From Auanema rhodensis (taxonomy: Eukaryota; Animalia; Nematoda): a stretch of 64,000 bases of DNA. Positions 9,677-62,680 of the stretch are shown here, piece after piece. Position 1 is the first letter of the stretch, and every line of letters begins with the position of its first letter. The notes beneath the pieces were generated by a model that saw nothing but the letters and a program-made list of their open reading frames with translations, had not been told where the DNA came from and ran no database searches. The stretch is taken from contig OZ059897.1 in assembly GCA_964057225.1 (NCBI GenBank), forward strand, positions 7,564,001-7,628,000, given 5' to 3'. The position numbers and the translations under genes are program-made.

Positions 9677-10034
9677 CGTTCCATTCGGATGATCAATGCA
9701 TTACATTCATATGACGAAGCTGTAGCAGGCGGGTTAGAGTCAGAGAATGCGAGACTGAGAGAAGACGACCCGCCCTTTTCCATATTACAACACTTCAGCT
9801 TTGCCTCAGGGACGATCATGGATGGTTGGTCGTTCTCTCTCTGTTCTCTATTAGTTTAACCTTTACTTAGTTATATGTATCTTATTGTAATCACGTAGAT
9901 ATAATAAACCAATCTTTCTCGAGTCTTATGTTTATCCTTATGCTCCATGTTTAACCGCTACATCTGGAATACTACCACGCTCATCTTGTAGACTCCATTG
10001 GTCTGTAAGATCGACGCGGGAGCATAACGGAACG
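9677..10034 (+). repeat. E1 3' LTR (358 bp), termini CGTTCCATT...AACGGAACG
   Basis: Follows PPT + CA; both ends match the E2 5' LTR ends; terminal inverted repeat 8/9; AATAAA at 9903-9908. Confidence 0.9.
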
Positions 10035-10039
10035 ATGTA

Positions 10040-10112
10040 GCCTCGTTAGCTCAGCTGGTAAAGCGTTAGACTTTTAATCTAACGGTCAGGGGTTCGAGCC
10101 CCCTACATGGCT
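10040..10112 (+). pseudogene. Damaged first tRNA-Lys(UUU) copy
   Basis: D-stem GAGC>AAGC and 3' acceptor strand ACGGGGC>ACATGGC break pairing. Confidence 0.7.
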
Positions 10113-10298
10113 AATTTTTTTCATTCTATCTGTCCCGAACATGTAAAACTTAATTTTCTTACCTTGTTTAAACTTTTATTTATTCCAGAATCTTGAATTT
10201 TTCTTCAAATATAGATCTTTTTGAATTAAATTTAGAAGTAAATATACTATTCTATGAGTAAGTACTTCATTATTTTTATGAAATGGTGACGATATGTA

Positions 10299-10371
10299 GC
10301 CTCGTTAGCTCAGCTGGTAGAGCGTTAGACTTTTAATCTAACGGTCAGGGGTTCGAGCCCCCTACGGGGCT
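10299..10371 (+). tRNA. trnK-UUU: tRNA-Lys(UUU), consensus copy (representative of the large majority of copies)
   Basis: GCCTCGT/ACGGGGC acceptor; GCTC/GAGC D-stem; TTAGA-CTTTTAA-TCTAA anticodon arm; AGGGG-TTCGAGC-CCCCT T arm; U73; intact A and B boxes; no intron; no encoded CCA. Confidence 0.97.
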
Positions 10372-10373
10372 AA

Positions 10374-10379
10374 TTTTTT
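10374..10379 (+). terminator. RNA polymerase III oligo-T terminator (present after almost every copy)
   Basis: AA followed by T5-T7 directly after the discriminator base. Confidence 0.85.
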
Positions 10380-13300
10380 ACATTCTATCTGTCCCGAACA
10401 TGTAAAACTTAATTTTCTTACCTTGTTTGAACTTTTATTTATTCCAGAATCTTGAATTTTTCTTCAAATATAGATCTTTTTGAATTGAATTTAGAAGTAA
10501 ATATACTATTCTATGAGTAAGTACTTCATTATTTTTATGAAATGGTGACGATATGTAGCCTCGTTAGCTCAGCTGGTAGAGCGTTAGACTTTTAATCTAA
10601 CGGTCAGGGGTTCGAGCCCCCTACGGGGCTAATTTTTTTCATTCTATCTGTCCCGAAAATGTAAAACTTAATTTTCTTACCGTGTTCAAACTTTTATTTA
10701 TTCCAGAATCTTGAATTTTTCTTCAAATATAGATCTTTTTGAATTAAATTTAGAAGTAAATATAATATTGTATGAGGAAGTACTTCATTATTTTTATGAA
10801 ATGGTGACGATATGTAGCCTCGTTAGCTCAGCTGGTAGAGCGTTAGACTTTTAATCTAACGGTCAGGGGTTCGAGCCCCCTACGGGGCTAATTTTATTCA
10901 TTCTATCTGTCCCGAACATGTAAAACTTAATTTTCTTACCGTGTTCAAACTTTTATTTATTCCAGAATTTTGAATTTTTCTTCAAATATAGATCTTTTTG
11001 AATTAAATTTAGAAGTAAATATAATATTGTATGAGGAAGTACTTCATTATTTTTATGAAATGGTGACGATATGTAGCCTCTTTAGCTCAGCTGGTAGAGC
11101 GTTAGACTTTTAATCTAACGGTCAGGGGTTCGAGCCCCCTACGGGGCTAATTTTTTACATTCTATCTGTCCCGAACATGTAAAACTTAATTTTCTTACCT
11201 TGTTTGAACTTTTATTTATTCCAGAATCTTGAATTTTTCTTCAAATATAGATCTTTTTGAATTGAATTTAGAAGTAAATATACTATTCTATGAGTAAGTA
11301 CTTCATTATTTTTATGAAATGGTGACAATATGTAGCCTCGTTAGCTCAGCTGGTAGAGCGTTAGACTTTTAATCTAACGGTCAGGGGTTCGAGCCCCCTA
11401 CGGGGCTAATTTTTTTCATTCTATCTGTCCCGAACATGTAAAACTTAATTTTCTTACCTTGTTTAAACTTTCATTTATTCCAGAATCTTGAATTTTTCTT
11501 CAGATATAGATCTTTTTGAATTAAATTTAGAAGTAAATATACTATTCTATGAGTAAGTACTTCATTATTTTTATGAAATGGTGACGATATGTAGCCTCGT
11601 TAGCTCAGCTGGTAGAGCGTTAGACTTTTAATCTAACGGTCAGGGGTTCGAGCCCCCCACGGGGCTAATTTTTTACATTCTATCTGTCCCGAACATGTAA
11701 AACTTAATTTTCTTACCTTGTTTAAACTTTTATTTATTCCAGAATCTTGAATTTTTCTTCAAATATAGATCTTTTTGAATTAAATTTAGAACTAAATATA
11801 CTATTCTATGAGTAGGTACTTCATTAATTTTATGAAATGGTGACGATATGTGGCCTCGTTAGCTCAGCTGGTAGAGCGTTAGACTTTTAATCTAACGGTC
11901 AGGGGTTCGAGCCCCCTACGGGGCTAATTTGTCACATTCTATCGGTCCCGAACATGTAAAACTTAATTTTCTTACATTGTTTAAACTTTTATTTATTCCA
12001 GAATCTTGAATTTTTCTTCAAATATAGATCTTTTTGAATTAAATTTAGAAGTAAATATACTATTCTATGAGTAAGTACTTCATTATTTTTATGAAATGGT
12101 GACGATATGTAGCCTCGTTAGCTCAGCTGGTAGAGCGTTAGACTTTTAATCTAACGGTCAGGGGTTCGAGCCCCCTACGGGGCTAATTTTTTACATTCTA
12201 TCTGTCCCGAACATGTAAAACTTAATTTTCTTACCTTGTTTGAACTTTTATTTATTCCAGAATCTTGAATTTTTCTTCAAATATAGATCTTTTTGAATTG
12301 AATTTAGAAGTAAATATACGATTCTATGAGTAAGTACTTCATTATTTTTATGAAATGGTGACGATATGTAGCCTCGTTAGCTCAGCTGGTAGAGCGTTAG
12401 ACTTTTAATCTAACGGTTAGGGGTTCGAGCCCCCTACGGGGCTAATTTTTTTCATTCTATCTGTCCCGAACATGTAAAACTTAATTTTCTTACCTTGTTT
12501 AAACTTTCATTTATTCCAGAATCTTGAATTTTTCTTCAAATATAGATCTTTTTGAATTAAATTTAGAAGTAAATATACTATTCTATGAGTAAGTACTTCA
12601 TTATTTTTATGAAATGGTGACGATATGTAGCCTCGTTAGCTCAGCTGGTAGAGCGTTAGACTTTTAATCTAACGGTCAGGGGTTCGAGCCCCCCACGGGG
12701 CTAATTTTTTACATTCTATCTGTCCCGAACATGTAAAACTTAATTTTCTTACCTTGTTTAAACTTTTATTTATTCCAGAATCTTGAATTTTTCTTCAAAT
12801 ATAGATCTTTTTGAATTAAATTTAGAACTAAATATGCTATTCTATGAGTAGGTACTACATTAATTTTATGAAGTTAAGAGGATGTGTGGCCTCGTTAGCT
12901 CAGCTGGTAGAGCGTTAGACTTTTAATCTAACGGTCAGGGGTTCGAGCCCCCTACGGGGCTAATTTTTTACATTCTATCTGTCCCGAACATGTAAAACTT
13001 AATTTTCTTACCTTGTTTAAACTTTTATTTATTCCAGAATCTTGAATTTTTCTTCAAATATAGATCTTTTTGAATTAAATTTAGAAGTAAATATACTATT
13101 GTATGAGTAGGTACTTCATTATTTTTATGAAATGGCGACGATATGTAGCCTCGTTTGCTCAGCTGGTAGAGCGTTAGACTTTTAATCTAACGGTCAGGGG
13201 TTCGAGCCCCCTACGGGGCTAATTTTTAACATTCTATCTGTTCCGAACATGTAAAACTTTATTTTCTTACCTTGTTTAAACTTTTATTTATTCCAGAATC

Positions 13301-13665
13301 TTGAATTTTTCTTCAAATATAGATCTTTTTGAATTAAATTTAGAAGTAAATATACTATTGTATGAGTAGGTACTTCATTGTTTTTATGAAATGGCGACGA
13401 TATGTAGCCTCGTTAGCTCAGCTGGTAGAGCGTTAGACTTTTAATCTAACGGTCAGGGGTTCGAGCCCCCTACGGGGCTAATTTTTTACATTCTATCTGT
13501 TCCGAACATGTAAAACTTTATTTTCTTACCTTGTTTAAACTTTTATTTATTCCAGAATCTTGAATTTTTCTTCAAATATAGATCTTTTTGAATTAAATTT
13601 AGAAGTAAATATACTATTGTATGAGTAGGTACTTCATTATTTTTATGAAATGGCGACGATATGTA

Positions 13666-13738
13666 GCCTCGTTAGCTCAGCTGGTAAAGCGTTAGACTTT
13701 TAATATAACGGTCAGGGGTTCGAGCCCCCTACGGGGCT
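13666..13738 (+). pseudogene. tRNA-Lys variant with D-stem and anticodon-stem mismatches
   Basis: GGTAAAGC instead of GGTAGAGC, and TATAA instead of TCTAA. Confidence 0.6.
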
Positions 13739-16700
13739 AATTTTTTACATTCTATCTGTCCCGAACATGTAAAACTTTATTTTCTTACCTTGTTTGAACT
13801 TTCATTTATTCCAGAATCTTGAATTTTTCTTCAAATATAGATCTTTTTGAATTAAATTTAGAAGTAAATATACTATTGTATGAGTAGGTACTTCATTATT
13901 TTTATGAAATGGCGACGATATGTAGCCTCGTTAGCTCAGCTGGTAGAGCGTTAGACTTTTAATCTAACGGTCAGGGGTTCGAGCCCCCTACGGGGCTAAT
14001 TTTTAACATTCTATCTGTTCCGAACATGTAAAACTTTATATTCTTACCTTGTTTAAACTTTTATTTATTCCAGAATCTTGAATTTTTCTTCAAATATAGA
14101 TCTTTTTGAATTAAATTTAGAAATAAATATACTATTGTATGAGTAGGTACTTCATTATTTTTATGAAATGGCGACGATATGTAGCCTCGTTAGCTCAGCT
14201 GGTAGAGCGTTAGACTTTTAATCTAACGGTCAGGGGTTCGAGCCCCCTACGGGGCTAATTTTTTACATTCTATCTGTCCCGAACATGTAAAACTTTATTT
14301 TCTTACCTTGTTTGAACTTTCATTTATTCCAGAATCTTGAATTTTTCTTCAAATATAGATCTTTTTGAATTAAATTTAGAAGTAAATATACTATTGTATG
14401 AGTAGGTACTTCATTATTTTTATGAAATGGCGACGATATGTAGCCTCGTTAGCTCAGCTGGTAGAGCGTTAGACTTTTAATCTAACGGTCAGGGGTTCGA
14501 GCCCCCTACGGGGCTAATTTTTTACATTCTATCTGTCCCGAACATGTAAAACTTTATTTTCTTACCTTGTTTGAACTTTCATTTATTCCAGAATCTTGAA
14601 TTTTTCTTCAAATATAGATCTTTTTGAATTAAATTTAGAAGTAAATATACTATTGTATGAGTAGGTACTTCATTATTTTTATGAAATGGCGACGATATGT
14701 AGCCTCGTTAGCTCAGCTGGTAGAGCGTTAGACTTTTAATCTAACGGTCAGGGGTTCGAGCCCCCTACGGGGCTAATTTTTTACATTCTATCTGTTCCGA
14801 ACATGTAAAACTTTATTTTCTTACCTTGTTTAAACTTTTATTTATTCCAGAATCTTGAATTTTTCTTCAAATATAGATCTTTTTGAATTAAATTTAGAAG
14901 TAAATATACTATTGTATGAGTAGGTACTTCATTATTTTTATGAAATGGCGACGATATGTAGCCTCGTTAGCTCAGCTGGTAGAGCGTTAGACTTTTAATC
15001 TAACGGTCAGGGGTTCGAGCCCCCTACGGGGCTAATTTTTTACATTCTATCTGTCCCGAACATGTAAAACTTTATTTTCTTACCTTGTTTGAACTTTCAT
15101 TTATTCCAGAATCTTGAATTTTTCTTCAAATATAGATCTTTTTGAATTAAATTTAAAAGTAAATATACTATTCTATGAGTAGGTACTTCATTATTTTTAT
15201 GAAATGGCGACGATATGTAGCCTCGTTAGCTCAGCTGGTAGAGCGTTAGACTTTTAATCTAACGGTCAGGGGTTCGAGCCCCCTACGGGGCTAATTTTTA
15301 ACATTCTATCTGTTCCGAACATGTAAAACTTAATTTTCTTACCTTGTTTGAACTTTCATTTATTCCAGAATCTTGAATTTTTCTTCAAATATAGATCTTT
15401 TTGAATTAAATTTAAAAGTAAATATACTATTCTATGAGTAGGTACTTCATTAATTTTATGAAGTTAGGAGGATGTGTAGCCTCGTTAGCTCAGCTGGTAG
15501 AGCGTTAGACTTTTAATCTAACGGTCAGGGGTTCGAGCCCCCTACGGGGCTAATTTTTTACATTCTATCTGTCCCGAACATGTAAAACTTAATTTTCTTA
15601 CCTTGTTTAAACTTTCATTTATTCCAGAATCTTGAATTTTTCTTCAAATATAGATCTTTTTGAATTAAATTTAAAAGTAAATATACTATTCTATGAGTAG
15701 GTACTTCATTATTTTTATGAAATGGCGACGATATGTAGCCTCGTTAGCTCAGCTGGTAGAGCGTTAGACTTTTAATCTAACGGTCAGGGGTTCGAGCCCC
15801 CTACGGGGCTAATTTTTTACATTCTATCTGTCCCGAACATGTAAAACTTTATTTTCTTACCTTGTTTGAACTTTCATTTATTCCAGAATCTTGAATTTTT
15901 CTTCAAATATAGATCTTTTTGAATTAAATTTAAAAGTAAATATACTATTCTATGAGTAGGTACTTCATTAATTTTATGAAGTTAGGAGGATGTGTAGCCT
16001 CGTTAGCTCAGCTGGTAGAGCGTTAGACTTTTAATCTAACGGTCAGGGGTTCGAGACCCCTACGGGGCTAATTTTTTACATTCTATCTGTCCCGAACATG
16101 TAAAACTTAATTTTCTTACCTTGTTTAAACTTTTATTTATTCCAGAATCTTGAATTTTTCTTCAAATATAGATCTTTTTGAATTAAATTTAGAAGTAAAT
16201 ATACTATTCTATGAGTAAGTACTTCATTATTTTTATGAAATGGTGACGATATGTAGCCTCGTTAGCTCAGCTGGTAGAGCGTTAGACTTTTAATCTAACG
16301 GTCAGGGGTTCGAGCCCCCTACGGGGCTAATTTTTTACATTCTATCTGTCCCGAACATGTAAAACTTAATTTTCTTACCTTGTTTAAACTTTCATTTATT
16401 CCAGAATCTTGAATTTTTCTTCAAATATAGATCTTTTTGAATTAAATTTAGAAGTAAATATAATATTGTATGAGTAAGTACTTCATTATTTTTATGAAAT
16501 GGTGACGATATGTAGCCTCGTTAGCTCAGCTGGTAGAGCGTTAGACTTTTAATCTAACGGTCAGGGGTTCGAGCCCCCTACGGGGCTAATTTTTTACATT
16601 CTATCTGTTCCGAACATGTAAAACTTTATATTCTTACCTTGTTTAAACTTTTATTTATTCCAGAATCTTGAATTTTTCTTCAAATATAGATCTTTTTGAA

Positions 16701-19700
16701 TTAAATTTAGAAATAAATATACTATTGTATGAGTAGGTACTTCATTATTTTTATGAAATGGCGACGATATGTAGCCTCGTTAGCTCAGCTGGTAGAGCGT
16801 TAGACTTTTAATCTAACGGTCAGGGGTTCGAGCCCCCTACGGGGCTAATTTTTTACATTCTATCTGTCCCGAACATGTAAAACTTTATTTTCTTACCTTG
16901 TTTGAACTTTCATTTATTCCAGAATCTTGAATTTTTCTTCAAATATAGATCTTTTTGAATTAAATTTAGAAGTAAATATACTATTGTATGAGTAGGTACT
17001 TCATTATTTTTATGAAATGGCGACGATATGTAGCCTCGTTAGCTCAGCTGGTAGAGCGTTAGACTTTTAATCTAACGGTCAGGGGTTCGAGCCCCCTACG
17101 GGGCTAATTTTTTACATTCTATCTGTCCCGAACATGTAAAACTTTATTTTCTTACCTTGTTTGAACTTTCATTTATTCCAGAATCTTGAATTTTTCTTCA
17201 AATATAGATCTTTTTGAATTAAATTTAGAAGTAAATATACTATTGTATGAGTAGGTACTTCATTATTTTTATGAAATGGCGACGATATGTAGCCTCGTTA
17301 GCTCAGCTGGTAGAGCGTTAGACTTTTAATCTAACGGTCAGGGGTTCGAGCCCCCTACGGGGCTAATTTTTTACATTCTATCTGTTCCGAACATGTAAAA
17401 CTTTATTTTCTTACCTTGTTTAAACTTTTATTTATTCCAGAATCTTGAATTTTTCTTCAAATATAGATCTTTTTGAATTAAATTTAGAAGTAAATATACT
17501 ATTGTATGAGTAGGTACTTCATTATTTTTATGAAATGGCGACGATATGTAGCCTCGTTAGCTCAGCTGGTAGAGCGTTAGACTTTTAATCTAACGGTCAG
17601 GGGTTCGAGCCCCCTACGGGGCTAATTTTTTACATTCTATCTGTCCCGAACATGTAAAACTTTATTTTCTTACCTTGTTTGAACTTTCATTTATTCCAGA
17701 ATCTTGAATTTTTCTTCAAATATAGATCTTTTTGAATTAAATTTAAAAGTAAATATACTATTCTATGAGTAGGTACTTCATTATTTTTATGAAATGGCGA
17801 CGATATGTAGCCTCGTTAGCTCAGCTGGTAGAGCGTTAGACTTTTAATCTAACGGTCAGGGGTTCGAGCCCCCTACGGGGCTAATTTTTAACATTCTATC
17901 TGTTCCGAACATGTAAAACTTAATTTTCTTACCTTGTTTGAACTTTCATTTATTCCAGAATCTTGAATTTTTCTTCAAATATAGATCTTTTTGAATTAAA
18001 TTTAAAAGTAAATATACTATTCTATGAGTAGGTACTTCATTAATTTTATGAAGTTAGGAGGATGTGTAGCCTCGTTAGCTCAGCTGGTAGAGCGTTAGAC
18101 TTTTAATCTAACGGTCAGGGGTTCGAGCCCCCTACGGGGCTAATTTTTTACATTCTATCTGTCCCGAACATGTAAAACTTAATTTTCTTACCTTGTTTAA
18201 ACTTTTATTTATTCCAGAATCTTGAATTTTTCTTCAAATATAGATCTTTTTGAATTAAATTTAGAAGTAAATATACTATTCTATGAGTAAGTACTTCATT
18301 ATTTTTATGAAATGGTGACGATATGTAGCCTCGTTAGCTCAGCTGGTAGAGCGTTAGACTTTTAATCTAACGGTCAGGGGTTCGAGCCCCCTACGGGGCT
18401 AATTTTTTACATTCTATCTGTCCCGAACATGTAAAACTTAATTTTCTTACCTTGTTTAAACTTTTATTTATTCCAGAATCTTGAATTTTTCTTCAAATAT
18501 AGATCTTTTTGAATTAAATTTAGAAGTAAATATAATATTGTATGAGTAAGTACTTCATTATTTTTATGAAATGGTGACGATATGTAGCCTCGTTAGCTCA
18601 GCTGGTAGAGCGTTAGACTTTTAATCTAACGGTCAGGGGTTCGAGCCCCCTACGGGGCTAATTTTTTACATTCTATCTGTCCCGAACATGTAAAACTTAA
18701 TTTTCTTACCTTGTTTAAACTTTTATTTATTCCAGAATCTTGAATTTTTCTTCAAATATAGATCTTTTTGAATTAAATTTAGAAGTAAATATACTATTCT
18801 ATGAGTAAGTACTTCATTATTTTTATGAAATGGTGACGATATGTAGCCTCGTTAGCTCAGCTGGTAGAGCGTTAGACTTTTAATCTAACGGTCAGGGGTT
18901 CGAGCCCCCTACGGGGCTAATTTTTTACATTCTATCTGTCCCGAACATGTAAAACTTAATTTTCTTACCTTGTTTAAACTTTTATTCATTCCAGAATCTT
19001 GAATTTTTCTTCAAATATAGATCTTTTTGAATTAAATTTAGAAGTAAATATACTATTCTATGAGTAAGTACTTCATTATTTTTATGAAATGGTGACGATA
19101 TGTAGCCTCGTTAGCTCAGCTGGTAGAGCGTTAGACTTTTAATCTAACGGTCAGGGGTTCGAGCCCCCTACGGGGCTAATTTTTTACATTCTATCTGTCC
19201 CGAACATGTAAAACTTAATTTTCTTACCTTGTTTAAACTTTTATTTATTCCAGAATCTTGAATTTTTCTTCAAATATAGATCTTTTTGAATTAAATTTAG
19301 AAGTAAATATACTATTGTATGAGTAGGTACTTCATTATTTTTATGAAATGGCGACGATATGTAGCCTCGTTAGCTCAGCTGGTAGAGCGTTAGACTTTTA
19401 ATCTAACGGTCAGGGGTTCGAGCCCCCTACGGGGCTAATTTTTTACATTCTATCTGTCCCGAACATGTAAAACTTTATTTTCTTACCTTGTTTGAACTTT
19501 CATTTATTCCAGAATCTTGAATTTTTCTTCAAATATAGATCTTTTTGAATTAAATTTAGAAGTAAATATACTATTCTATGAGTAAGTACTTCATTATTTT
19601 TATGAAATGGTGACGATATGTAGCCTCGTTAGCTCAGCTGGTAGAGCGTTAGACTTTTAATCTAACGGTCAGGGGTTCGAGCCCCCTACGGGGCTAATTT

Positions 19701-50787: not shown

Positions 50788-50805
50788 TGGAGGTTCCGCC
50801 GAGAT
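50788..50805 (+). promoter_or_regulatory. E3 primer-binding site, tRNA-Gln
   Basis: TGGAGGTTCCGCCGAGAT immediately 3' of the LTR; complementary to ATCTCGGTGGAACCTCCA with one G:U pair. Confidence 0.85.
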
Positions 50806-51987
50806 CCTTCCTTTTGGACAGGATCTCGTAAAGGAACTCAAGCGCTACCGTCTACATCTCTTATTCAATTAAAAATCTTATCTCTCTCTTAAAGTTAGCT
50901 TATAATATTTTCTTAAAAACTCTAAAACTTTTCTATTAAAAATTATATCCAAAAACTCTTTACAAAAACTCAGTTTTCCATTCATTATATTCTCATAAAT
51001 CATTTTCAATTATTCATAAGAGTACTTATATCATTTATCATTCTCTCTATCCAAAATCCTATATACGAAAATTATTCAAATTCAATAATTAACTTTTCTA
51101 AGAATTATAAGTTTATTTTCACATTTTTGAACAAAAATAGTTGAGTTCTTTATAAAATTAATTTAGAAATAAAAAAGAATATTGCTTCTATACCTCTCAA
51201 TCTTAATCATCTTACCATATTATCTGAATCTTCATCTTATCATACTATCTTAATCATCCTATCATACCATATTTTCATTATTTTCTTTATGTTCGTTTAT
51301 AAAACTATTATTCTTATGCTACTACACTGTATTCTCATAAACCCACCCCTTCCCCCCCCCCCGTAATTTCATAAGCAAGAAATCCCGTGTTAAACACGAC
51401 AGTAAAAATATTTATTAGGCGCAGCGTATCCAAGTTCCGATTACCTTAGCACCTGAAAAAACGAAAAATAATTAAATTAATCAATAAGTTTTAACTCATA
51501 CGCAAAAACCATCCCCCCCTCGTTAAGAATAATGCCAGACACTCAAGAGACTCGAGCGGAGGCCGACACTCAGGATAAGACGTACGCCCCATGAAATAAT
51601 TAGAGAATTTTTGAATTAAAATCTGCCCCACATTGATATAAATAATAAGAGTGGTCTCGCCATCATAGAGTCAGGGAGCAGGATGCAGAAGGCAGCTGAC
51701 ATACCTGTGACTCAGATAGGTTAATGAGGTCTGGGAAAATGAAATGATTGCGAAAATTCTATTTTGTATCCTTGTCCCAAAAGACTGGCGAACTATTAAC
51801 TTTCATTTCATGCCTTTTTCACAATATAGAACTTGTCCCTTCGAAAAGGCACACTAGTTTCAAACCTGTGTTAGACCCGGACGAGCTATATTGGTAAAGA
51901 GATTACTTGCAAGACTAGCTACCTTCATAAGAATCGCGCACACAAACCCAACATTATTCTTTACGTTTTTCTATATATAAAATTATT

Positions 51988-54900: not shown

Positions 54901-57900
54901 AAACTTAGCAAACGGATCACAATTAAGGATTTTAAGAAGATACTACCAACCAAAACAGGAGACTACTATGAAATCGCGAAAGAAATTGCTTACTCACTTG
55001 CGGAAATACCAACTACGTTAGCTACAGGAGAAACAACACCATCTTTAGAAGAATACTTATATCAACTCATGCCACCAAGAAAACCAAGACTCACCAAGAC
55101 ACGAAACGATTTAGAACTGTACGAACAACTAGCACAAGCAAAAATTATCCTGAACGCAATAAATAATCCGAAAAAGCTACATTCAAAAGAAGAATACGAA
55201 GCAGAAATGAAGAAATGGATCAAATATGAAAAAGAACTGAACTTACCACCATTACAACTGCCAAACTACACAGTTATCTTCGATGGCGACGATATATTCT
55301 ACGGCTTCCGGAAAAGAAATCCTACAAATTATAGCATTACACAAGAGGATAGTGAAAAATTTTATAATCATTATCTACCCCTTATCAGTACTCCCGGAAC
55401 ACGACCTTTTGCAACCACAATTAGAAGCACTTCGACCCCCCTACAAACTACTACTACAACCACTACCACGACCCCTAAGCCTACAACCATAAGGAACGTC
55501 ATCACTTCGACAATCACACCCAAAACACATATATCCACAACAACTAGACCCAAACCAACAATACCCACGTCTTCATCAACTACTACTACTACTACCACTA
55601 CTACTACTACTACTTCTACTACTGCTAGACCCAGATCAACAACAACCACAACACCTACAACAACCACAACTATATTCACCACTCATCGACCAACACAATC
55701 ATTCTCCACCCCCCAATCTACATTCAATATTACTACAAACCCAATCACAATCACCTCAAGCCAGGAATACAATAGGAAAGAATCACTCACCAAGTCACCG
55801 CCTCCAAGAACTACAAAAAGATCTATCACTACCACTCGCAGCACACCTGAAGAAATATCATCACATATTGGTAAGAAAGCTCACGTAGACTACCTTAAAG
55901 CTAAGAACGATATCGTCCAAAAATGGAATGAACATCTTCATCAACAAGAAACGCAATCTCATCTACAATATGCCACTACCAATCTGGAAGATGATATCAT
56001 ACGTACGTTCACAACAAACAGAAACAACATCTGCCACGTACAAAATAAACAACTACTTACCTGGTGGGCTATTCTTCAAATAAATCCTACTATAGGGATG
56101 CGTACAATGCTACGACGACAGGATATATCTGCAAGATTCATAAATGATAAACTAATTTATGTAATGCCATGCACACCAATTCAAATTACAAAAACATACC
56201 GCGATCACAAAGTCAACAGCACGTGTTTTCTGGAAACCCCAGTCGAAACGGAACATCACGGCCAACTGTTCATCCTACCAGGTACAAGAGACCTCACACC
56301 GATGGCACATGCCATACCATGCGGATTCACAATCAAGGATCCCTGGAAAGAAAACGATCAATGGACTAATAATAACCAATCAATAAATGTAACATCACCA
56401 GCATACATCGACGAGTTAGGATCAATCAACCTAGAACATATCAAGTTTAATGGAAGCAACATTTTCAACAATCTAACAGAATCAACGTTTCCTATGGCAC
56501 TAGCAATATCATATGGATCCAGCTTAGCAACGCTACAAGCTACTTTACCAGGAAGAATAAAACCTATAATCAAACAAAGATTAATTCCTAACATGAACCC
56601 TGTTACCCTAACAGCAGGAGCAGCCAGCAGCTTACTACTCAGCTACGAACATACAAAAGAAGCTATAACCTGGAAAATGTTTGACTTTCTGTCACCAATA
56701 TGGGAAAAGATTCAAACCTGGACACTACGCGTACTTGCTATCATTGGATCAATCATCATAACAATTGGCATAATCACACTCGCCACCTGGATAATAAAAA
56801 TATACGCATGTAGTTCAAGGATACCCATCAACAATGTCAAATGGGAAGCAGAATACTTACAACCACTATCAACTGAAGACACAAGAACAGAAACATCTCA
56901 TCCTTCTCCGTCCGCTCCATACGTCGACAACCATCACAACAGCTGTCAACTCACATTGTATGATCCTTCAGCACCAATTCCTGAACACATTTATGAAGCT
57001 TATTTCCCTACAAGCATGAAGAAAGAAAACATAAACTACATAGGAGGATCACAATTACCGTTTGTCCCGATTTCAATCCACAATCACATCTTTAAGGCAC
57101 TATGGGACACGGGAGCATCAGCATCATACATGCGAGAATCCACCTTCAAACAACTGCCCGCTGCAACGATGGTACTAAAACAAACAACAGCGATAGTCGC
57201 GAATAAATCTAAATTCTCATTTATGGGATACACAAGGATCCTCATAACAATAGGAACAACAGAAACAGAACACAAATTTTATGTAGCAGAAGATAACTAC
57301 TGTCCAGCACCAGTGTTACTTGGAATAGACTTCATGGAAGCATTACATCAACAAGGAATTTACACCTCACTTCGACCGCTGGATAAAACAATTGTTATCG
57401 GCACAACACATGTTCCACTAGCACGAGAAACATCTCCGTGGGAACACCAGACCACGAAAGCATATGTGGTTAGCTTAGAAAACAAAACGCTAAGACCAGG
57501 AGAAACAAGAACGCTCACGCTAGAAGTACACGATCCAGAAAGCTATGAACAGGCGTTTCTAGATTGTAAGAAACCAGGCAACAAACTCTCTTTCACGCCT
57601 ACTATATTTACGCCAACTGGATACGGAGTACAAATTTACGCGACGAACATATGCAAACAGCCACTCGAAATTCAAATGAATCAAGAAATAGGGATAGCAG
57701 AAGCGATACCAAAGGACAACCAAGAAAAATACGAAGGACAATACATACCTCCAGAAGCTCGATGGGAAGAACAACTGCCATATTTCCCAGACAATTTCAT
57801 CAATGAGCTTGACCTTTCAGAAGCCTGCTTCTCACAAATCGAACAACAGCAACTGAAAGAAATAATTTTACTACATAAACAAGCGTTTCTCAACGAAGAT

Positions 57901-60900
57901 AGAAATATCGGACTCTTCCTAGGACCAATTGAACACTCCATTCCAATCATGCCAGGAAAAACACCATCATTCAAAATTACTTATCGTATACCACTCTCCC
58001 AACAAGAAGAAGTGGAGAAACAAATAGAAGAAATGCTACAACAAAGAATCATTGAACCATCAAACTCAATGACAACTAGTCCAGTAATTTTGGTGAAGAA
58101 GAAAGACAAAACTTACAGATTTGTAACGGACTTTCGAGCTTTGAATGCAATCACTCAGAAACAAGTATATGTTATATCAAACATACAGGACATCCTAGAT
58201 TTGGCCGCTGGAGCAAGGATCTTCAGCAACTTTGATTTAGTATCTGGATTTTTCCAAATACCTCTTAAGAAAGAAGATCGTCATCTTACAGCTTTCACAA
58301 CAACAAGTGGAACTTATCAATATTGTCGAATGCCGATGGGATTATGTGGATCACCCCATACTTTTCAAAACGCAGTACGATACCTGCAATCAATGGTTAA
58401 ATGCAAGCTATTCGTATATCTAGATGATTTACTGTTAATCTCTGAATCTACGACAGCACATTTAAAAGATATTGAAGAAGTTTTGGAAGCAGTAACTCAA
58501 ATAGGATTCAAAATAAAACTGAAGAAATGCGCATTCGCAAGAAAGGAAGTAAAATTTCTAGGATACATAGTTGGACAAGAAGGAATTAAACCGGACCCAC
58601 ATAAAATTAAGGCAATACAAGATTATCCCCAACCAAAATCAACAACAGGAGTAAGAGCTTTCATGGGAGTAGTAAACTACTTCAGAAGGTTCATAAAGAA
58701 CGCTGCAGGAATAGCAACACCACTCTACAACCTCACTCGGAAAGACACTCCATTCAAATGGACAGAAGAAGAAGAAATTGCTTTTAATACTTTGAAGAAA
58801 ACATTGACTCAAGCACCTGTGTTACAAGCACCAATCCCGAAGCGACCATATGTTATTGAAAGTGATGGAAGTATGATAGCAGTTGGCGCTGTACTACTTC
58901 AAGCGAAAGACGATCAAGAACCATTACATCCAATAGCTTTTGCTAGTCGGAAACTCAACAAAGCTGAAAGGAATTATCCACCAATAGAAGTAGAAGCATT
59001 AGCTCTTACATTCGCCGTCAAACAATTTCGCACCTACATACTAGGAACAGCAACCAAAATTATCACGGACCATAGACCACTCACTAGTTTAATGACTAGA
59101 AAGGATTTAATAGGTCGTTTAGCAAAATTTCAAATTGTTTTACAAGAATACGATATTGAAATTATCTACAGACCAGGAAAATTAAACAGTGTATGTGACG
59201 CATTATCACGATATTTTGAAGATGAAATCAACGAAGCAAAACCACCAGCAAAGAAGAAAAACGAAAGAAAAACGACGGAAGATACTATTCATCAGATAAA
59301 CACCTTCACGATAGCAGATATTCGATCAGTTCAGAATCAATCAAATTGGATAAAAGAAACTATGGATAAAATAAAGAACAATACAGCTGGACGACAACTG
59401 ACGGACAGATATATTGTGTACAACGATGTACTATACTCAAAACCAAAAAGAAGCCTACAAGTACCACGAACAATTTTACCACGAGAAGAACACATAATTA
59501 ATCCAATTATGAAGAAATTTCATGAAGATCCGACACTCGGAGCTCATCTAGGAATAAACAAAACAATGGACTCAATATCAAGACGATTTACATGGACTGG
59601 AATGCAAGAAGACATTACAAACTACATCAACAGATGTCTTGCTTGTGCAAAAAGAAAGAACAATCCTCACGAAGCAACGGTGGAACCAATGAAAAATTTT
59701 CCAACATCAACAAAACCATGGCAAAGAGTACACATGGATATACTCGGACCATTACCTAGGACAGAACAAGAAAACAGATATGTTCTTTCAATTCAAGATT
59801 CTTTTTCAAAATGGATAATCGCAATTCCGCTAATCAGACAAACATCAGAAGAAATTATATCAGCTATCGAAAAATACCTCTTCTATGTTTTTGGACCACC
59901 TGTCACTATCATCACAGACAATGGATCTAATTTTATTTCAAACGATTTCACCACTATGTGCAGTAATTTTGGAACTACACACCACACTACTATGCCGTAT
60001 TACAAAAACGCTAACGGACAAGTAGAAAGATTACATCGGACGATCGAAGAAGCATTAACAGCCTACGTTAATGACGAACAAAACGATTGGGATAAGATAC
60101 TTCCGAAGATTATTTTTACACTCAACAGATTACCAAACGCCACCACTAAAACATCACCATACGAATGTTTGTTTGGACAAGTAGCACGTCTACCCATTGA
60201 CAAAAACTTGGAAACACCGGAAGAACAAAATACCACGGATCAGCTCAAAAACTTAAGAGATATTCAAGAAAAAGTCAAGGAAAAGATTGCCACCAATGAA
60301 GAAAGAATGAAGCAGAAATACGATCAAGCACATAGGACAAAAGAAAGAATATTAGATATAGGAGATCGAGTATTTGTACAAAGAGCGAACCCAAGCAACA
60401 AATTACAAATACGAAGAGATGGACCTTACCGGATAGTGACAATTGAAGGAAACAACATCAGCATAACGGACCAAGATGGAAATATTATAAAAGCTCACAA
60501 AAATAACATACGTTATTTTCCACCAGACGATAATCTTATATCAACAAGAAATAATGAAGAAGAGGAAGAAGAGGACCAAGACATAGCAAACGAAGAAGAA
60601 GAAGAAGAAGAAGCAAGTTGGAATAATCTGGATGAATGGGAACAAACCAATAATACGGAAAATAACAACAACTGTTACCCAACAGGCAGTCCAGATACTC
60701 TCGCGCAACTGTTACCTATCACAGGGAATAACAGAGGAGTAAACGAAGAAGAAATTGAACATAACTCAGAAACACCTGACGACCTTGCTACAGCAAGAAG
60801 AATAACAAATTCTAATATACAATTAGAAGATGAATCAACAACAATCGACAGAATTCAAGAGGACCTCAGACAGCTGACACCTTTCTCTCAAGAAGAAGGT

Positions 60901-61233
60901 CCTAATCAAAACGATATAGAAGATAATAACGCAAAAACATACGAAAAGCTACGAGATCAATTCAAGAATGAAAACAGAAAGGAGCTATTTGAGGACAGAA
61001 ACAAAAACTCACCAGCAATCAAAAATTGGAACACTACACTTGCCGCAGCACTAGGAATAGGAAATGAAAACTCACGCCCGTATCATGTTAAACTACAACC
61101 CAAAAGAAAAACACAAGACGAAGAAATCAGAAGTAATGGAGAATTGGAACTACATGGAAAAGCGGATCAAAGCAAAAAGCAGCAGAATAAATCTCCAACG
61201 CAAAACAAAGGAGAACAAGTACGAAACTTTTAA
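51988..61233 (+). CDS. E3 Gag-Env-Pol polyprotein (3081 aa from TTG; first ATG at 52033)
   Basis: Colinear with E1: capsid (PRYDGKTPF), N/R/Q/Y-rich region, signal peptide, env, TM, protease LWDTGA (~57106), RT YLDD (~58417), RNase H, integrase HHCC/DDE/GPY, long acidic tail. Confidence 0.95.
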   Translation: MAHVGYNKFPYRIPTMLLNTGPKPPLDPAATSNIIRRKRQPPATYSPPSAKQAKLSIKTKSMVIHTPRHRGIQKQFTNPKSHEKTKKQKTDIVERNTLEKKIIPNIKPIPKNIASKGNPQNPPTNTIPNTINPINPLIATPRRSNTPTTQKSPTPALSSTTPAVSSSPPLRNSPSSIDHSTSGHSLSPSLPSQTNQANTFVAENKRINPRMDPMDEGAPLTQTSGRAPVPTPTIIPQPAAIPSAIRDIKAPRYDGKTPFNRYLLYLDEHFNATRTTMPERLQSIQLLLEDDRAREAYRKLTTEDKRLGWDHVKKRLSEMITPKKQRERAMHRLHGLKQLPTESVQSFATRCSNEAYSAMDMNNESELNMLRSTFTWGLRPEISEHVSRLDPPNFEEAYEMALREELFIQNRPTSFVNNIEKSFNNLNIRDSKDNNQYQRNESKDFKGTKPMYNGNGKPHNRYPDRYNNQYRPHQHQYRNHNSRFSQNKGSRQNYFDRSRNRSQERPYYRNRDQNYSGHNNRRQSNNHEQYPSQYNRSQYNNYRSRPRSTSNGPERYRERTQSPGVRFQVNNVTENEVPNNKRKSTPFLPLFITIIALIINTCSAETTYQLCTGNRGGIYVEPPSPTACRFIAPTNNHIQKTTAELFIQNLQPKEWEAWKCAIETYQLCIHDVFFIRETNVSLAKVSPTTLQECSSAIKERIFNGTNLQREAPGLYGTPFPETTITNGIWKQECEQRTRFIAERGHMTSLQDNTVLSDIFINDNGCTSDKGQCLTNNALIIWTPPSEKHSCSYTSLGSHEVFISEDTILIPGIQSAFILNNKTPEKEASSCLQKEIFTTNSGTLISFNSTSSLGRSRRHAITEYPKGFLTVHQYPSLRYSASKTGTILLYTTYIQRKRLDIHYNLNNITNMLPKYIAIFKYLGINFDVIKNRLIWHKYEDVNIAILHALGEAEIREATKIAIDNLSYKELTHKLSKRITIKDFKKILPTKTGDYYEIAKEIAYSLAEIPTTLATGETTPSLEEYLYQLMPPRKPRLTKTRNDLELYEQLAQAKIILNAINNPKKLHSKEEYEAEMKKWIKYEKELNLPPLQLPNYTVIFDGDDIFYGFRKRNPTNYSITQEDSEKFYNHYLPLISTPGTRPFATTIRSTSTPLQTTTTTTTTTPKPTTIRNVITSTITPKTHISTTTRPKPTIPTSSSTTTTTTTTTTTTSTTARPRSTTTTTPTTTTTIFTTHRPTQSFSTPQSTFNITTNPITITSSQEYNRKESLTKSPPPRTTKRSITTTRSTPEEISSHIGKKAHVDYLKAKNDIVQKWNEHLHQQETQSHLQYATTNLEDDIIRTFTTNRNNICHVQNKQLLTWWAILQINPTIGMRTMLRRQDISARFINDKLIYVMPCTPIQITKTYRDHKVNSTCFLETPVETEHHGQLFILPGTRDLTPMAHAIPCGFTIKDPWKENDQWTNNNQSINVTSPAYIDELGSINLEHIKFNGSNIFNNLTESTFPMALAISYGSSLATLQATLPGRIKPIIKQRLIPNMNPVTLTAGAASSLLLSYEHTKEAITWKMFDFLSPIWEKIQTWTLRVLAIIGSIIITIGIITLATWIIKIYACSSRIPINNVKWEAEYLQPLSTEDTRTETSHPSPSAPYVDNHHNSCQLTLYDPSAPIPEHIYEAYFPTSMKKENINYIGGSQLPFVPISIHNHIFKALWDTGASASYMRESTFKQLPAATMVLKQTTAIVANKSKFSFMGYTRILITIGTTETEHKFYVAEDNYCPAPVLLGIDFMEALHQQGIYTSLRPLDKTIVIGTTHVPLARETSPWEHQTTKAYVVSLENKTLRPGETRTLTLEVHDPESYEQAFLDCKKPGNKLSFTPTIFTPTGYGVQIYATNICKQPLEIQMNQEIGIAEAIPKDNQEKYEGQYIPPEARWEEQLPYFPDNFINELDLSEACFSQIEQQQLKEIILLHKQAFLNEDRNIGLFLGPIEHSIPIMPGKTPSFKITYRIPLSQQEEVEKQIEEMLQQRIIEPSNSMTTSPVILVKKKDKTYRFVTDFRALNAITQKQVYVISNIQDILDLAAGARIFSNFDLVSGFFQIPLKKEDRHLTAFTTTSGTYQYCRMPMGLCGSPHTFQNAVRYLQSMVKCKLFVYLDDLLLISESTTAHLKDIEEVLEAVTQIGFKIKLKKCAFARKEVKFLGYIVGQEGIKPDPHKIKAIQDYPQPKSTTGVRAFMGVVNYFRRFIKNAAGIATPLYNLTRKDTPFKWTEEEEIAFNTLKKTLTQAPVLQAPIPKRPYVIESDGSMIAVGAVLLQAKDDQEPLHPIAFASRKLNKAERNYPPIEVEALALTFAVKQFRTYILGTATKIITDHRPLTSLMTRKDLIGRLAKFQIVLQEYDIEIIYRPGKLNSVCDALSRYFEDEINEAKPPAKKKNERKTTEDTIHQINTFTIADIRSVQNQSNWIKETMDKIKNNTAGRQLTDRYIVYNDVLYSKPKRSLQVPRTILPREEHIINPIMKKFHEDPTLGAHLGINKTMDSISRRFTWTGMQEDITNYINRCLACAKRKNNPHEATVEPMKNFPTSTKPWQRVHMDILGPLPRTEQENRYVLSIQDSFSKWIIAIPLIRQTSEEIISAIEKYLFYVFGPPVTIITDNGSNFISNDFTTMCSNFGTTHHTTMPYYKNANGQVERLHRTIEEALTAYVNDEQNDWDKILPKIIFTLNRLPNATTKTSPYECLFGQVARLPIDKNLETPEEQNTTDQLKNLRDIQEKVKEKIATNEERMKQKYDQAHRTKERILDIGDRVFVQRANPSNKLQIRRDGPYRIVTIEGNNISITDQDGNIIKAHKNNIRYFPPDDNLISTRNNEEEEEEDQDIANEEEEEEEASWNNLDEWEQTNNTENNNNCYPTGSPDTLAQLLPITGNNRGVNEEEIEHNSETPDDLATARRITNSNIQLEDESTTIDRIQEDLRQLTPFSQEEGPNQNDIEDNNAKTYEKLRDQFKNENRKELFEDRNKNSPAIKNWNTTLAAALGIGNENSRPYHVKLQPKRKTQDEEIRSNGELELHGKADQSKKQQNKSPTQNKGEQVRNF
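53746..56810 (+). other. env: E3 envelope glycoprotein region (gB-like class III)
   Basis: Signal FLPLFITIIALIINTCSA; Cys pattern conserved with E1; RSRR furin site (54547-54558); Thr-rich mucin (~55410-55740); CHVQNKQLLTWWAILQINPTIGMRTML..ISARF..PC and CFLETPV; TM ~56725-56805. Confidence 0.8.
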
Positions 61234-61436
61234 TTAACTAACAAAAATCGTAGAATTGTAAAAATAATTTTTCTTTCTTTCGTATAGTACATTAAACATA
61301 AGACATAGATCAAAAACCACCGAAATTCTAATTTCTATCCTTTAATTTTAACAAATTGTAACAATCACTGAAAAACAAACTATATAAAGAGAAAATTTTG
61401 ATAGAGAAAAATTCAATAACACTTTTCTTACTCAAA

Positions 61437-61985
61437 ATGACCTCCTCTCTCGCCAACGTCACACTCTCTACATTCCTCGCAACTCCAACACCACTGGTCC
61501 CTCTAGCGACCACTATTGAACAAGAATGGATAGAGGTAGAAAACCTTCGTGAAGGTCTTCTACCTATCAACTGCATGAAGCCCAACTTAGGACCAATAAT
61601 AAGCCTCCAAACGAGCAAATTGGAAAAGAAGACACAGCACATCCTATTTATGATGGAACTATTGGAGGAGAAAACCAAAAACTATAAGGAAAACGATCTG
61701 AAGGAGCTTCGCCAGCATCAAAAGAAATGGACAGAAGGATGTTCTCTCAGCCAGAAAGAGAACAGAATCCGACACATAATGCTGGGACAACCCGCCAGAA
61801 CGCAGACCACAGCTGACATCTATAAAGCAATGCCGACATGGACAACACAGATGACACAACAAGCTGTAGGAAATAGCGGAACCGAAGAAGAAGCATCGTG
61901 GATAGAGATAGGGCAAGACCTATCAGTAGTAATCAAAAAAACTACTGACAAAAAGGACTACCAACATGTCCGCATCAAAAAGTAA
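61437..61985 (+). CDS. E3 accessory ORF2 (182 aa from ATG), unknown function
   Basis: AAAATG context; coding-like composition between two AT-rich tracts; lies inside the element between pol and the 3' LTR; no family recognised. Confidence 0.6.
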   Translation: MTSSLANVTLSTFLATPTPLVPLATTIEQEWIEVENLREGLLPINCMKPNLGPIISLQTSKLEKKTQHILFMMELLEEKTKNYKENDLKELRQHQKKWTEGCSLSQKENRIRHIMLGQPARTQTTADIYKAMPTWTTQMTQQAVGNSGTEEEASWIEIGQDLSVVIKKTTDKKDYQHVRIKK

Positions 61986-62264
61986 GGCAAAAGCAGTTAG
62001 CCAAACCATCAGAACAATGGAGCTGCTTGGACTAGCATCAATGACGGAAATGATCCAGGAAATTGACCAACTGGCGGATTAAAGAAGAGAGGAAAGGTTT
62101 AAATCATTTATAAAATTCTATCTCTTAAAAATTTTTCTCTTTATCAATAATTTGTTGAAAAATTTGCTTTATCTCATGCCATTTTTTTTTAATTTTTATT
62201 TTTCTCTCTTAATTATTATTTGCATATAACAGCTGAGGTCAGCTGACTTGTATCCGTTGGGGCA

Positions 62265-62680
62265 TGTTACATACATATCTCAAAGGAAAGCAGCTGACCA
62301 TGGCAGCTGCTATTATTAAACTAATGCAGATAGTTTTTAAGCAATTCTGAGAATATTCTAGATGCACTTTTTATAAACTTTGTAACAATTTGTGTAAACT
62401 GAGTAGGAGTTGTATGGATATATAAACCTGAGTCCTCAAGACTCAGGATCTCATTATCTCATTATCTTACTTTCTCTTTATCTTCTTTATATTCTCTTTC
62501 TTAACTCTAGCTTTAATCTTTGTATAATTATATTATAATGCGAACAATAAACCTTTATATATTTCATCTCTTGTTTCTTATTTCACCTTACATTACACAC
62601 TTATATTTAAAATCATACTCATCGTCTCATAATCTGTTTGGATATCTCAACTTGGAACCATTGAGAATCTAAATGGAACG
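62265..62680 (+). repeat. E3 3' LTR
   Basis: Same sequence as 50372-50787; preceded by GGGG-CA. Confidence 0.97.

What the first reader, a model, noticed from the sequence alone, without database searches (positions are those of the whole stretch)
9677..62680. Three independent insertions of related elements in one tRNA-Lys array: candidate tRNA-gene-targeting retrovirus family
Seen: the E1 LTR ends 5 nt upstream of a tRNA gene (10034/10040). The E2 5' LTR starts 14 nt upstream of one, in opposite orientation (46562/46577). E3 sits mid-spacer, 99 nt downstream of one gene and 91 nt upstream of the next. No other transposon type occurs in ~38 kb of array. Known: yeast Ty3 integrates at Pol III start sites via TFIIIB/TFIIIC; Ty1 and Dictyostelium TRE/DGLT-A elements also target tRNA genes. 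Inference: the E1/E2 lineage targets the Pol III initiation zone and E3 may use a different offset. A ~150-copy array is a redundant safe harbour. tRNA targeting by an env-bearing metazoan element would be notable.
Basis: partly seen in the sequence, partly recalled or inferred. Interest (0 to 1): 0.85.

Follow-up and report, generated by a model that had tools for sequence, protein, structure and literature searches.

The report
Envelope-bearing retroelements inside a tRNA array
Three copies of an already described kind of nematode virus-like retroelement (gag, envelope and pol in one reading frame) sit inside a 149-gene tRNA-Lys tandem array. Two of them end 5 and 14 bases from a tRNA gene's start, which hints at yeast-Ty3-style homing to tRNA genes in an animal, but two junctions cannot prove it.

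Summary
The window holds 149 tRNA-Lys(UUU) genes on one strand, period 259 bp, interrupted only by three LTR elements. E1 (1-10034, +) ends 5 nt before a tRNA. E2 (43270-46562, minus) starts 14 nt before a tRNA. E3 (50372-62680, +) lies mid-spacer with a 4-bp target duplication and identical LTRs.

The elements are Ty3/gypsy-type. Gag, a class III (gB / Monjiviricetes G-type) fusion glycoprotein and PR-RT-RNaseH-IN lie in one 2909- or 3081-codon frame. This GAG-ENV-POL kind is already published for nematodes, and the nearest relatives here are Auanema and Caenorhabditis proteins.

Corrections to the finding:
- E2 is a coding-deficient derivative. It lacks about 165 nt of adjoining spacer and has no target duplication.
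- E1's 5' end lies off the window.

tRNA targeting is suggestive only. In a periodic array, offset and local sequence are confounded. E3 does not fit. The E1 integrase lacks Ty3's second beta-barrel.

The decisive distribution test needed other copies to be fetched. That was barred, so I left it out.

The parts
1..10034 (+). E1: LTR element that runs off the window start (5' LTR not in the window)
   Evidence: One open frame plus a 3' LTR. The right terminus is complete and matches the E2 and E3 termini.
255..8984 (+). E1 single reading frame, 2909 codons with no stop: gag - env - PR - RT - RNaseH - IN
   Evidence: Pfam hits by residue: gag 288-419, fusion glycoprotein 1338-1609 (47.1 bits against a cut-off of 27), PR 1684-1773, RT 2030-2188, RNaseH 2252-2385, IN 2499-2668.
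1116..1511 (+). E1 gag capsid-like domain
   Evidence: Pfam Retrotrans_gag and Ty3_capsid.
1929..5099 (+). E1 env: internal signal/anchor-like hydrophobic segment, Cys-rich ectodomain with a class III fusion domain, then a transmembrane segment
   Evidence: Hydrophobic segments at residues 559-585 and 1579-1615. Pfam Monjiviricetes_fusion and Glycoprotein_B. Weak hits to solved gB chains. 291 relatives in the representative library.
5304..8801 (+). E1 pol: PR, RT, RNaseH, IN (HHCC, catalytic core, one SH3-like barrel)
   Evidence: AF2 model with pLDDT 82. Foldseek finds retroviral and Ty3 integrases.
8844..8981 (+). E1 acidic, low-confidence C-terminal tail of IN
9677..10034 (+). E1 3' LTR (358 nt), preceded by a purine-rich tract
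10040..43263 (+). tRNA-Lys(UUU) array, segment A: 129 genes, period 259
10040..10112 (+). tRNA gene 5 nt downstream of E1; it carries three private substitutions
   Evidence: It has one of the lowest Rfam scores in the array (58.2 bits).
43270..46562 (-). E2: 3.3-kb coding-deficient relative of E1 in the opposite orientation. Nearly the whole gag-env-pol frame is absent (one large internal deletion), and no ORF exceeds 138 codons.
46226..46562 (-). E2 5' LTR (337 nt, complete terminus); its outer end lies 14 nt from tRNA 46577
46213..46225 (-). E2 primer-binding site next to the 5' LTR
   Evidence: It is like the E3 site and matches the array's tRNA-Lys for only 5 nt.
43270..43586 (-). E2 3' LTR. 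It is shorter than its partner at the outer edge and abuts the T-run of tRNA 43191-43263.
   Evidence: The LTR pair has 2 mismatches in 313 nt.
46577..50272 (+). tRNA-Lys array, segment B: 15 genes
50368..50371 (.). E3 target-site duplication, left copy (AATA; 5 bp if the next T belongs to the flank)
   Evidence: Uninterrupted units hold this sequence once.
50372..62680 (+). E3: complete 12,309-bp LTR element in mid-spacer
50372..50787 (+). E3 5' LTR (416 nt), followed by the primer-binding site at 50788-50800
   Evidence: No mismatch was found between the two LTRs.
51988..61233 (+). E3 single reading frame, 3081 codons with no stop: gag - env - PR - RT - RNaseH - IN - long acidic tail
   Evidence: Collinear with E1 at 28% and 43.5% identity.
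53737..56811 (+). E3 env (signal-like segment, ectodomain, transmembrane segment)
   Evidence: Hydrophobic segments at residues 584-605 and 1575-1608. Glycoprotein_B hit below the cut-off. 43.5% identity to E1 across the fusion domain.
57055..60003 (+). E3 pol domains PR, RT, RNaseH, IN
62265..62680 (+). E3 3' LTR
62681..62684 (.). E3 target-site duplication, right copy
62772..64000 (+). tRNA-Lys array, segment C: 5 genes; it runs off the window

Best explanation
What is shown: three separate integrations of envelope-bearing Ty3/gypsy elements of the nematode GAG-ENV-POL kind into a large tRNA-Lys tandem array.

What is inferred: the E1/E2 lineage chooses its site through its integrase being held by the Pol III pre-initiation machinery on the tRNA promoter. 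This would be the kind of tether that Ty3, Tj1 and DGLT-A evolved independently. Integration would then fall within about 15 bp upstream of the mature tRNA start, in either orientation, leaving the gene itself intact. E2, which has no coding capacity, would have been placed by an integrase supplied by an autonomous relative. E3, from a sister family with about 43% pol identity, either has a looser window or is not tethered. The 150-copy array makes every such hit harmless, so copies persist there.

Each element would be expressed as one membrane-threaded polyprotein: gag in the cytosol, env ectodomain in the ER lumen between a signal-like segment and a transmembrane segment, and PR-RT-IN back in the cytosol. 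This is inferred from the hydrophobic segments only.
For: - Exact junctions: complete LTR termini lie 5 nt (E1) and 14 nt (E2) upstream of tRNA genes.
- The two elements are in opposite orientations.
- Uniform-null chance is 0.0029 for both E1 and E2, and 0.0085 for at least 2 of 3 insertions.
- A TATA-like T/A run lies about 20-29 nt upstream of each gene, so both junctions fall between it and the gene (read directly).
- The three putative target duplications share no motif. This argues against a simple sequence-specific target.
- All three interruptions of about 38 kb of array belong to one clade, and no other transposon type is present.
- The insertions are young: E3 LTRs are identical, and the E2 LTR pair has 2 mismatches in 313 nt.
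- Ty3/gypsy lineages have evolved Pol III targeting several times in compact genomes (PMC5911963, PMC6101501, PMC5006619).
- Ty1 shows that a short motif in a disordered integrase tail can suffice (PMC7459421). E1 and E3 both end in disordered acidic tails.
Against: - Only two informative junctions exist, and the category was chosen after seeing them.
- If 'just downstream' or 'inside the gene' would also have been flagged, the chance value rises towards 0.1 (my estimate).
- In a 259-bp periodic array, position relative to the tRNA and local sequence or structure cannot be separated.
- E3 sits mid-spacer.
- The far side of E2 is rearranged, so only one of its junctions is original.
- The E1 5' junction is outside the window.
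- The E1 integrase model has one SH3-like barrel and no second barrel of the Ty3 type. Pfam finds no chromodomain or other targeting domain.
- The paper that describes this element kind does not mention tRNA genes or integration sites.
- No copy outside the array could be examined.
Confidence: 0.4

Rival explanations
1. Passive accumulation. The elements integrate with little site preference, insertions elsewhere in a compact genome are removed by selection, and a redundant 150-copy array tolerates them. The -5 and -14 offsets would then be chance.
For: - E3 sits mid-spacer.
- Only two junctions support the offset claim.
- Every position in the array is within about 93 nt of a tRNA gene.
- No targeting domain is recognised in the integrases.
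- The window was selected because it looked unusual.
Against: - The uniform-null chance is 0.003-0.009.
- A passive sink should sample the genome's transposon diversity, yet all three insertions are one uncommon clade.
- The insertions are young, so there has been little time for selective sorting.
Confidence: 0.3
2. Regional or physical preference without a Pol III tether. Integration would favour this array's chromatin state (a repeat or heterochromatin-like domain), or bendable, nucleosome-free T/A-rich DNA such as the tract just upstream of each gene.
For: - Three copies of one clade lie in 64 kb.
- The spacer is AT-rich (GC 0.32-0.33), with a T/A run upstream of each gene.
- The E3 duplication is A/T only.
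- Bendability near the start site modulates even Ty3 (PMC8632968).
Against: - There is no chromodomain.
- The E1 and E2 duplications are not A/T-only and lie downstream of the T/A run.
- Much of the 186-nt spacer is equally AT-rich, yet two of three hits are in its last 14 nt.
Confidence: 0.2
3. The three are not independent insertions. One insertion would have been copied by array duplication, or the arrangement would be an assembly artefact.
For: The array shows multi-unit higher-order duplications.
Against: - E1 and E2 are in opposite orientations and their LTRs are only 74-81% identical.
- E3 has no DNA-level match to E2 and 28-43% protein identity to E1.
- The three junction positions within the unit all differ.
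- E3 has a clean 4-bp duplication.
Confidence: 0.03

Closest known systems
GAG-ENV-POL Ty3/gypsy elements with gB-type env of Nematoda, Bryozoa and Platyhelminthes ('ancient errantiviruses', Chary and Hayashi, eLife 2026, PMC13524379; 'non-canonical nematode endogenous retroviruses', Sacco et al. 2022, cited there; that paper was not held)
   Same: - LTRs, primer-binding site, Ty3/gypsy pol order, and a class III fusion glycoprotein placed between gag and pol.
- The ectodomain is flanked by two hydrophobic segments.
- Relatives are nematode proteins: Auanema and Caenorhabditis.
   Different: - Here gag, env and pol are one uninterrupted frame of about 3000 codons. The paper's text does not say this, although database relatives also fuse env and pol.
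- Location in a tRNA array and tRNA-proximal junctions are not reported there.
Saccharomyces Ty3 (also Tj1, Tyl3/Ylt1)
   Same: - Ty3/gypsy integrase fold. Solved structure 7q5b is among the Foldseek hits.
- Junctions lie a few bp upstream of a tRNA gene, in both orientations, with the gene left intact.
   Different: - Ty3 has no env.
- The Ty3 integrase holds TFIIIB through a CTD plus a vestigial chromodomain (PMC8632968). The E1 model has only one barrel.
- Ty3 specificity is proven on hundreds of sites; here there are two.
- Ty3 makes a 5-bp duplication; E3 makes 4 (or 5) bp.
Dictyostelium DGLT-A and Skipper-2
   Same: - DGLT-A is a single-ORF Ty3/gypsy element that inserts 13-33 bp upstream of the mature tRNA sequence in either orientation (PMC5911963). 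E2 at -14 fits this window.
   Different: - Amoebozoan host, no env, and about a third of the coding length.
- E1 at -5 lies outside the DGLT-A window.
Dada DNA transposons and Utopia-type non-LTR elements of animals
   Same: Animal mobile elements that use multicopy small-RNA genes as safe landing sites (PMC8869645, PMC4640811).
   Different: They are a different transposon class with a sequence-specific mechanism, and they insert inside the RNA gene rather than upstream of it.
Caenorhabditis elegans Cer1
   Same: A nematode Ty3/gypsy element. Pol relatives of E1 come from Caenorhabditis species.
   Different: Cer1 lacks a fusion glycoprotein. No tRNA association turned up for it in the library searches.

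Membership tests
Nematode-type GAG-ENV-POL Ty3/gypsy elements with gB-type env | Long terminal repeats with a target-site duplication | tested here: met
   E3 has 416-nt LTRs with no mismatch found and a 4-bp duplication. E2 has an LTR pair with 2 mismatches in 313 nt. For E1 only the 3' LTR is in the window.
Nematode-type GAG-ENV-POL Ty3/gypsy elements with gB-type env | Pol domain order PR-RT-RNaseH-IN (Ty3/gypsy, not Bel/Pao or copia) | tested here: met
   Pfam hits above cut-off in that order in E1 and E3. No Peptidase_A17 hit.
Nematode-type GAG-ENV-POL Ty3/gypsy elements with gB-type env | Class III (herpes gB / Monjiviricetes G type) fusion glycoprotein | tested here: met
   E1 scores 47.1 bits on Monjiviricetes_fusion against a cut-off of 27 and gives weak hits to gB chains in the PDB. 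E3 is below the cut-off on its own but 43.5% identical to E1 across the domain. No fold was predicted for env.
Nematode-type GAG-ENV-POL Ty3/gypsy elements with gB-type env | Env placed between gag and pol | tested here: met
   Residue order in both frames.
Nematode-type GAG-ENV-POL Ty3/gypsy elements with gB-type env | Nematode host | tested here: inconclusive
   The best named relatives are Auanema sp. JU1783 and Caenorhabditis species, at 44-63% identity in pol and 48% in env. No host gene other than the tRNA is in the window.
Pol III-gene-targeting Ty3/gypsy elements (Ty3 / Tj1 / DGLT-A type) | Many independent insertions confined to a narrow window upstream of Pol III genes | tested here: inconclusive
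   Two of two E1/E2 junctions lie at -5 and -14, while E3 is at +99/-91. The sample is far too small and confined to one array.
Pol III-gene-targeting Ty3/gypsy elements (Ty3 / Tj1 / DGLT-A type) | Either orientation, target gene left intact | tested here: met
   E1 is on the + strand and E2 on the minus strand. Both neighbouring genes are complete.
Pol III-gene-targeting Ty3/gypsy elements (Ty3 / Tj1 / DGLT-A type) | Association with different Pol III genes (other tRNA species, 5S, U6) | not tested
   The window holds one tRNA species only. Fetching other copies was barred and left out.
Pol III-gene-targeting Ty3/gypsy elements (Ty3 / Tj1 / DGLT-A type) | Ty3-type integrase C-terminus: SH3-like CTD plus vestigial chromodomain as tandem barrels (PMC8632968) | tested here: not met
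   The AF2 model of E1 residues 2480-2909 (pLDDT 82) has one barrel followed by a tail with pLDDT below 50. No chromodomain appears in Pfam. This excludes the Ty3 device, not tethering by another motif.
Pol III-gene-targeting Ty3/gypsy elements (Ty3 / Tj1 / DGLT-A type) | Integrase contact with TFIIIB or a Pol III subunit | not testable with these tools
   No host Brf1, TBP or AC40 sequence is at hand.
Insect errantiviruses (gypsy, ZAM, Idefix) | F-type env downstream of pol (GAG-POL-ENV) | tested here: not met
   The env is class III and lies upstream of pol.
Chromoviruses | Chromodomain at the integrase C-terminus | tested here: not met

The most novel reading that the evidence does not exclude
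A clade of envelope-bearing nematode Ty3/gypsy elements directs integration to the Pol III start zone of tRNA genes. It would be the first Pol III-gene-targeting LTR retroelement in an animal, evolved independently of the yeast and amoeba cases, and working without the Ty3-type chromodomain.
Probability: 0.35. Interest if true: 0.8.

Novelty: new variant of a known kind. Interest (0 to 1): 0.55.

Why it matters
In the 2018 review I read (PMC5911963), Pol III-directed integration is listed only for LTR and non-LTR elements of yeasts and social amoebae. It is the textbook case of a mobile element choosing a harmless site. An animal example, in an element that also carries a viral fusion protein, would show the strategy arising a further time. 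It would also give a natural animal system in which integration-site choice can be read directly from genome sequence.

Even without targeting, the locus is a clean record of young, apparently intact GAG-ENV-POL elements. It shows that gag, env and pol can be encoded as one membrane-threaded polyprotein.

Tried and rejected
- **Full-length relatives.** A word-based search with the env region, restricted to full-length polyprotein relatives, found only two Auanema proteins. An env-only search found one. The exhaustive representative search was needed to see the 291 relatives.
- **Targeting domains.** Pfam at a lax threshold on both integrase tails, on the gag regions and on the E3 3' ORF gave nothing beyond a weak SH3_Tf2-1 hit.
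- **Is the array's tRNA the primer?** No. The primer-binding sites of E2 and E3 match the array's tRNA-Lys for only 5 nt.
- **Is E3 a close DNA relative of E1/E2?** No blastn match between E2 and E3; the relatedness is at protein level only.
- **Is the E3 195-codon 3' ORF conserved?** It gives no hit in E1 or E2.
- **Solo LTRs or older remnants in the array.** None; the spacing is constant.
- **Other RNA families.** None besides tRNA.
- **Literature.** I found no paper on tRNA-proximal LTR elements in nematodes, or on such tRNA arrays. Sacco et al. 2022 is not held, and the supplements of PMC13524379 are not held.
- **Rejected readings.** Insect-type errantivirus, chromovirus, Bel/Pao, one insertion copied by array duplication, and a human contig. 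The window is not human, so that rule was not triggered.
Full report
**Observation.** ARAGORN finds 149 tRNA-Lys(UUU) genes, all on the + strand, spaced 258-259 bp apart. Rfam confirms each one (mostly 69.7 bits) and sets the gene bounds at 73 nt, for example 10040-10112. It finds no other RNA family in the window. Of the 149 genes, 134 share one sequence. The units show multi-unit higher-order duplications, so the array is being actively homogenised.
- E1 occupies 1-10034. Its LTR ends 5 nt before gene 10040.
- E2 occupies 43270-46562. Its outer LTR end is 14 nt before gene 46577.
- E3 occupies 50372-62680. It lies 99 nt after gene 50200-50272 and 91 nt before gene 62772.

**Anatomy of the elements.**
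- E3 is complete at 12,309 bp. It has two 416-nt LTRs with no mismatch found and a 4-bp duplication of host sequence that occurs once in intact units. A primer-binding site directly follows the 5' LTR, and a purine-rich tract precedes the 3' LTR.
- E1 runs off the window start. The window holds its reading frame and its 358-nt 3' LTR (9677-10034).
- E2 is 3.3 kb and lies in the opposite orientation. Its LTRs are 74-81% identical to the E1 LTR, and its own LTR pair differs at 2 of 313 positions.
- E2 has lost almost the whole coding region through one large internal deletion. No ORF exceeds 138 codons, so it is non-autonomous.
- The complete E2 LTR is the one next to tRNA 46577. The LTR at the other end is shorter at its outer edge and abuts the terminator T-run of the preceding tRNA. 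About 165 nt of host spacer is therefore missing, and no duplication can be read.
- E1/E2 and E3 share six-base inverted LTR termini of the same type and nearly the same primer-binding site. That site matches the array's tRNA-Lys for only 5 nt, so the primer tRNA is not the target tRNA.

**Coding capacity.**
- E1 (255-8984, 2909 codons) and E3 (51988-61233, 3081 codons) are each one uninterrupted frame.
- Pfam places the domains in this order: a Ty3-type capsid domain, a class III viral fusion glycoprotein, aspartic protease, RT, RNase H, and integrase with an HHCC finger. For the glycoprotein, E1 scores 47.1 bits on Monjiviricetes_fusion against a cut-off of 27, with herpes gB as second hit.
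- A signal/anchor-like hydrophobic segment follows gag, and a transmembrane segment precedes the protease.
- The two polyproteins are collinear, with 28% identity over the first 1040 residues and 43.5% from the fusion domain to the integrase.
- Solved gB chains return as weak named hits.
- The env region has 291 relatives in the representative library, many inside proteins of 2000-3300 residues. Three of these were checked: two carry env-PR-RT-RNaseH-IN by Pfam, and in the third the env match is not seen by Pfam.
- The best named relatives are Auanema sp. JU1783 and Caenorhabditis remanei, brenneri, japonica and auriculariae. The host is most likely a rhabditid nematode.

**What is already known.** Chary and Hayashi (eLife 2026, PMC13524379) report env-bearing Ty3/gypsy elements across Metazoa. 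They state that those of Nematoda, Bryozoa and Platyhelminthes carry only gB-type env, in the order GAG-ENV-POL, and they cite Sacco et al. 2022 for nematodes. The element kind is therefore known. That paper has no occurrence of 'tRNA gene', 'integration site' or 'target site'. The review of Pol III targeting (PMC5911963) lists Ty1, Ty3, Ty4, Tj1, Tca8, Tyl3, Ylt1, Tyl6, DGLT-A, Skipper-2 and TRE elements. All of these are from yeasts or dictyostelids. My library searches found no nematode case.

**Is there targeting? For:**
- Both authentic E1/E2-lineage junctions have complete LTR termini and lie in the last 14 nt before a tRNA gene, in opposite orientations. They fall between a TATA-like T/A run (about -29 to -20) and the gene, where a Pol III start site is expected.
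- On a uniform null over the 259-bp unit the chance is 0.0029 for both, and 0.0085 for at least 2 of 3 insertions.
- The three putative duplications share no motif.
- All three interruptions belong to one uncommon clade.
- The insertions are young.

**Is there targeting? Against:**
- There are only two data points, and they were classed after the fact. If other 'notable' classes are allowed, the chance rises towards 0.1 (my estimate).
- In a periodic array, offset and local sequence are the same variable.
- E3 is mid-spacer.
- One side of E2 is rearranged.
- The E1 5' junction is unseen.
- The AF2 model of the E1 integrase region (pLDDT 82) shows an HHCC domain, a catalytic core, a long helix and one SH3-like barrel, then a disordered acidic tail. 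The tandem barrel with a vestigial chromodomain, by which Ty3 holds TFIIIB (PMC8632968), is absent. Foldseek returns foamy-virus and Ty3 integrases alike.
- This rules out the Ty3 device but not a short tethering motif of the Ty1 kind (PMC7459421).

I therefore rate Pol III-tethered targeting of the E1/E2 lineage at about 0.4, passive tolerance at 0.3, regional or physical preference at 0.2, and non-independence or artefact at about 0.03.

- The decisive distribution test needs other genomic copies of these families with their flanks. I therefore ran no collection scan, no related-locus search and no encoding-contig look-up for them.
The only majority sequence computed was of the host array unit. 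It was used for counting differences and was not printed.

**Verdict.** The element kind is already known. The tRNA-targeting reading is a reasonable but unproven hypothesis, worth a genome-wide junction survey.

Noticed in passing
window 255-8984 and 51988-61233: Gag, env and pol form one uninterrupted frame of about 3000 codons. A signal-like segment follows gag and a transmembrane segment precedes the protease, which suggests a membrane-threaded polyprotein. The paper describing GAG-ENV-POL elements does not mention this, but database relatives (P0001, P0002, P0137, P0162) also fuse env with pol domains.
   Followed up: partly
window 10040-10112, 46577-46649, 50200-50272: tRNA genes that directly flank an insertion carry private substitutions in 3 of 5 cases, against 12 of 144 elsewhere (Fisher p = 0.007). 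Gene 10040 has three, two of them at the 3' end of the gene. This fits reduced homogenisation, or relaxed constraint, beside an insertion or at an array edge.
   Followed up: partly
window 10040-43263: The array shows higher-order repeats: blocks of 5-8 units with the same variant pattern recur two or three times. This indicates recent multi-unit duplications. A 149+-gene array of a single tRNA species is itself unusual for a nematode-like genome.
   Followed up: partly
window 43264-43270 and 46563-46576: E2 has replaced almost exactly one whole spacer. One end sits at the T-run terminator of one tRNA gene, and the other sits 14 nt before the next gene. Whether this is a later deletion or an aberrant integration is unresolved.
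   Followed up: partly
window 61398-61985: A 195-codon ORF lies between the E3 pol and the 3' LTR. It has no Pfam hit and no counterpart in E1 or E2. It may be spurious or lineage-specific.
   Followed up: yes
window 50788-51987 and 44911-46225: Unusually long (1.2-1.3 kb) leaders without long ORFs lie between the primer-binding site and the start of the gag frame in E3 and E2. In E1 the frame is open for 231 codons before the first ATG.
   Followed up: no
window 8844-8981 and 60520-61230: Both integrases end in acidic, low-complexity tails. The E3 tail is about 170 residues longer than the E1 tail. No fold or family match was found.
   Followed up: partly
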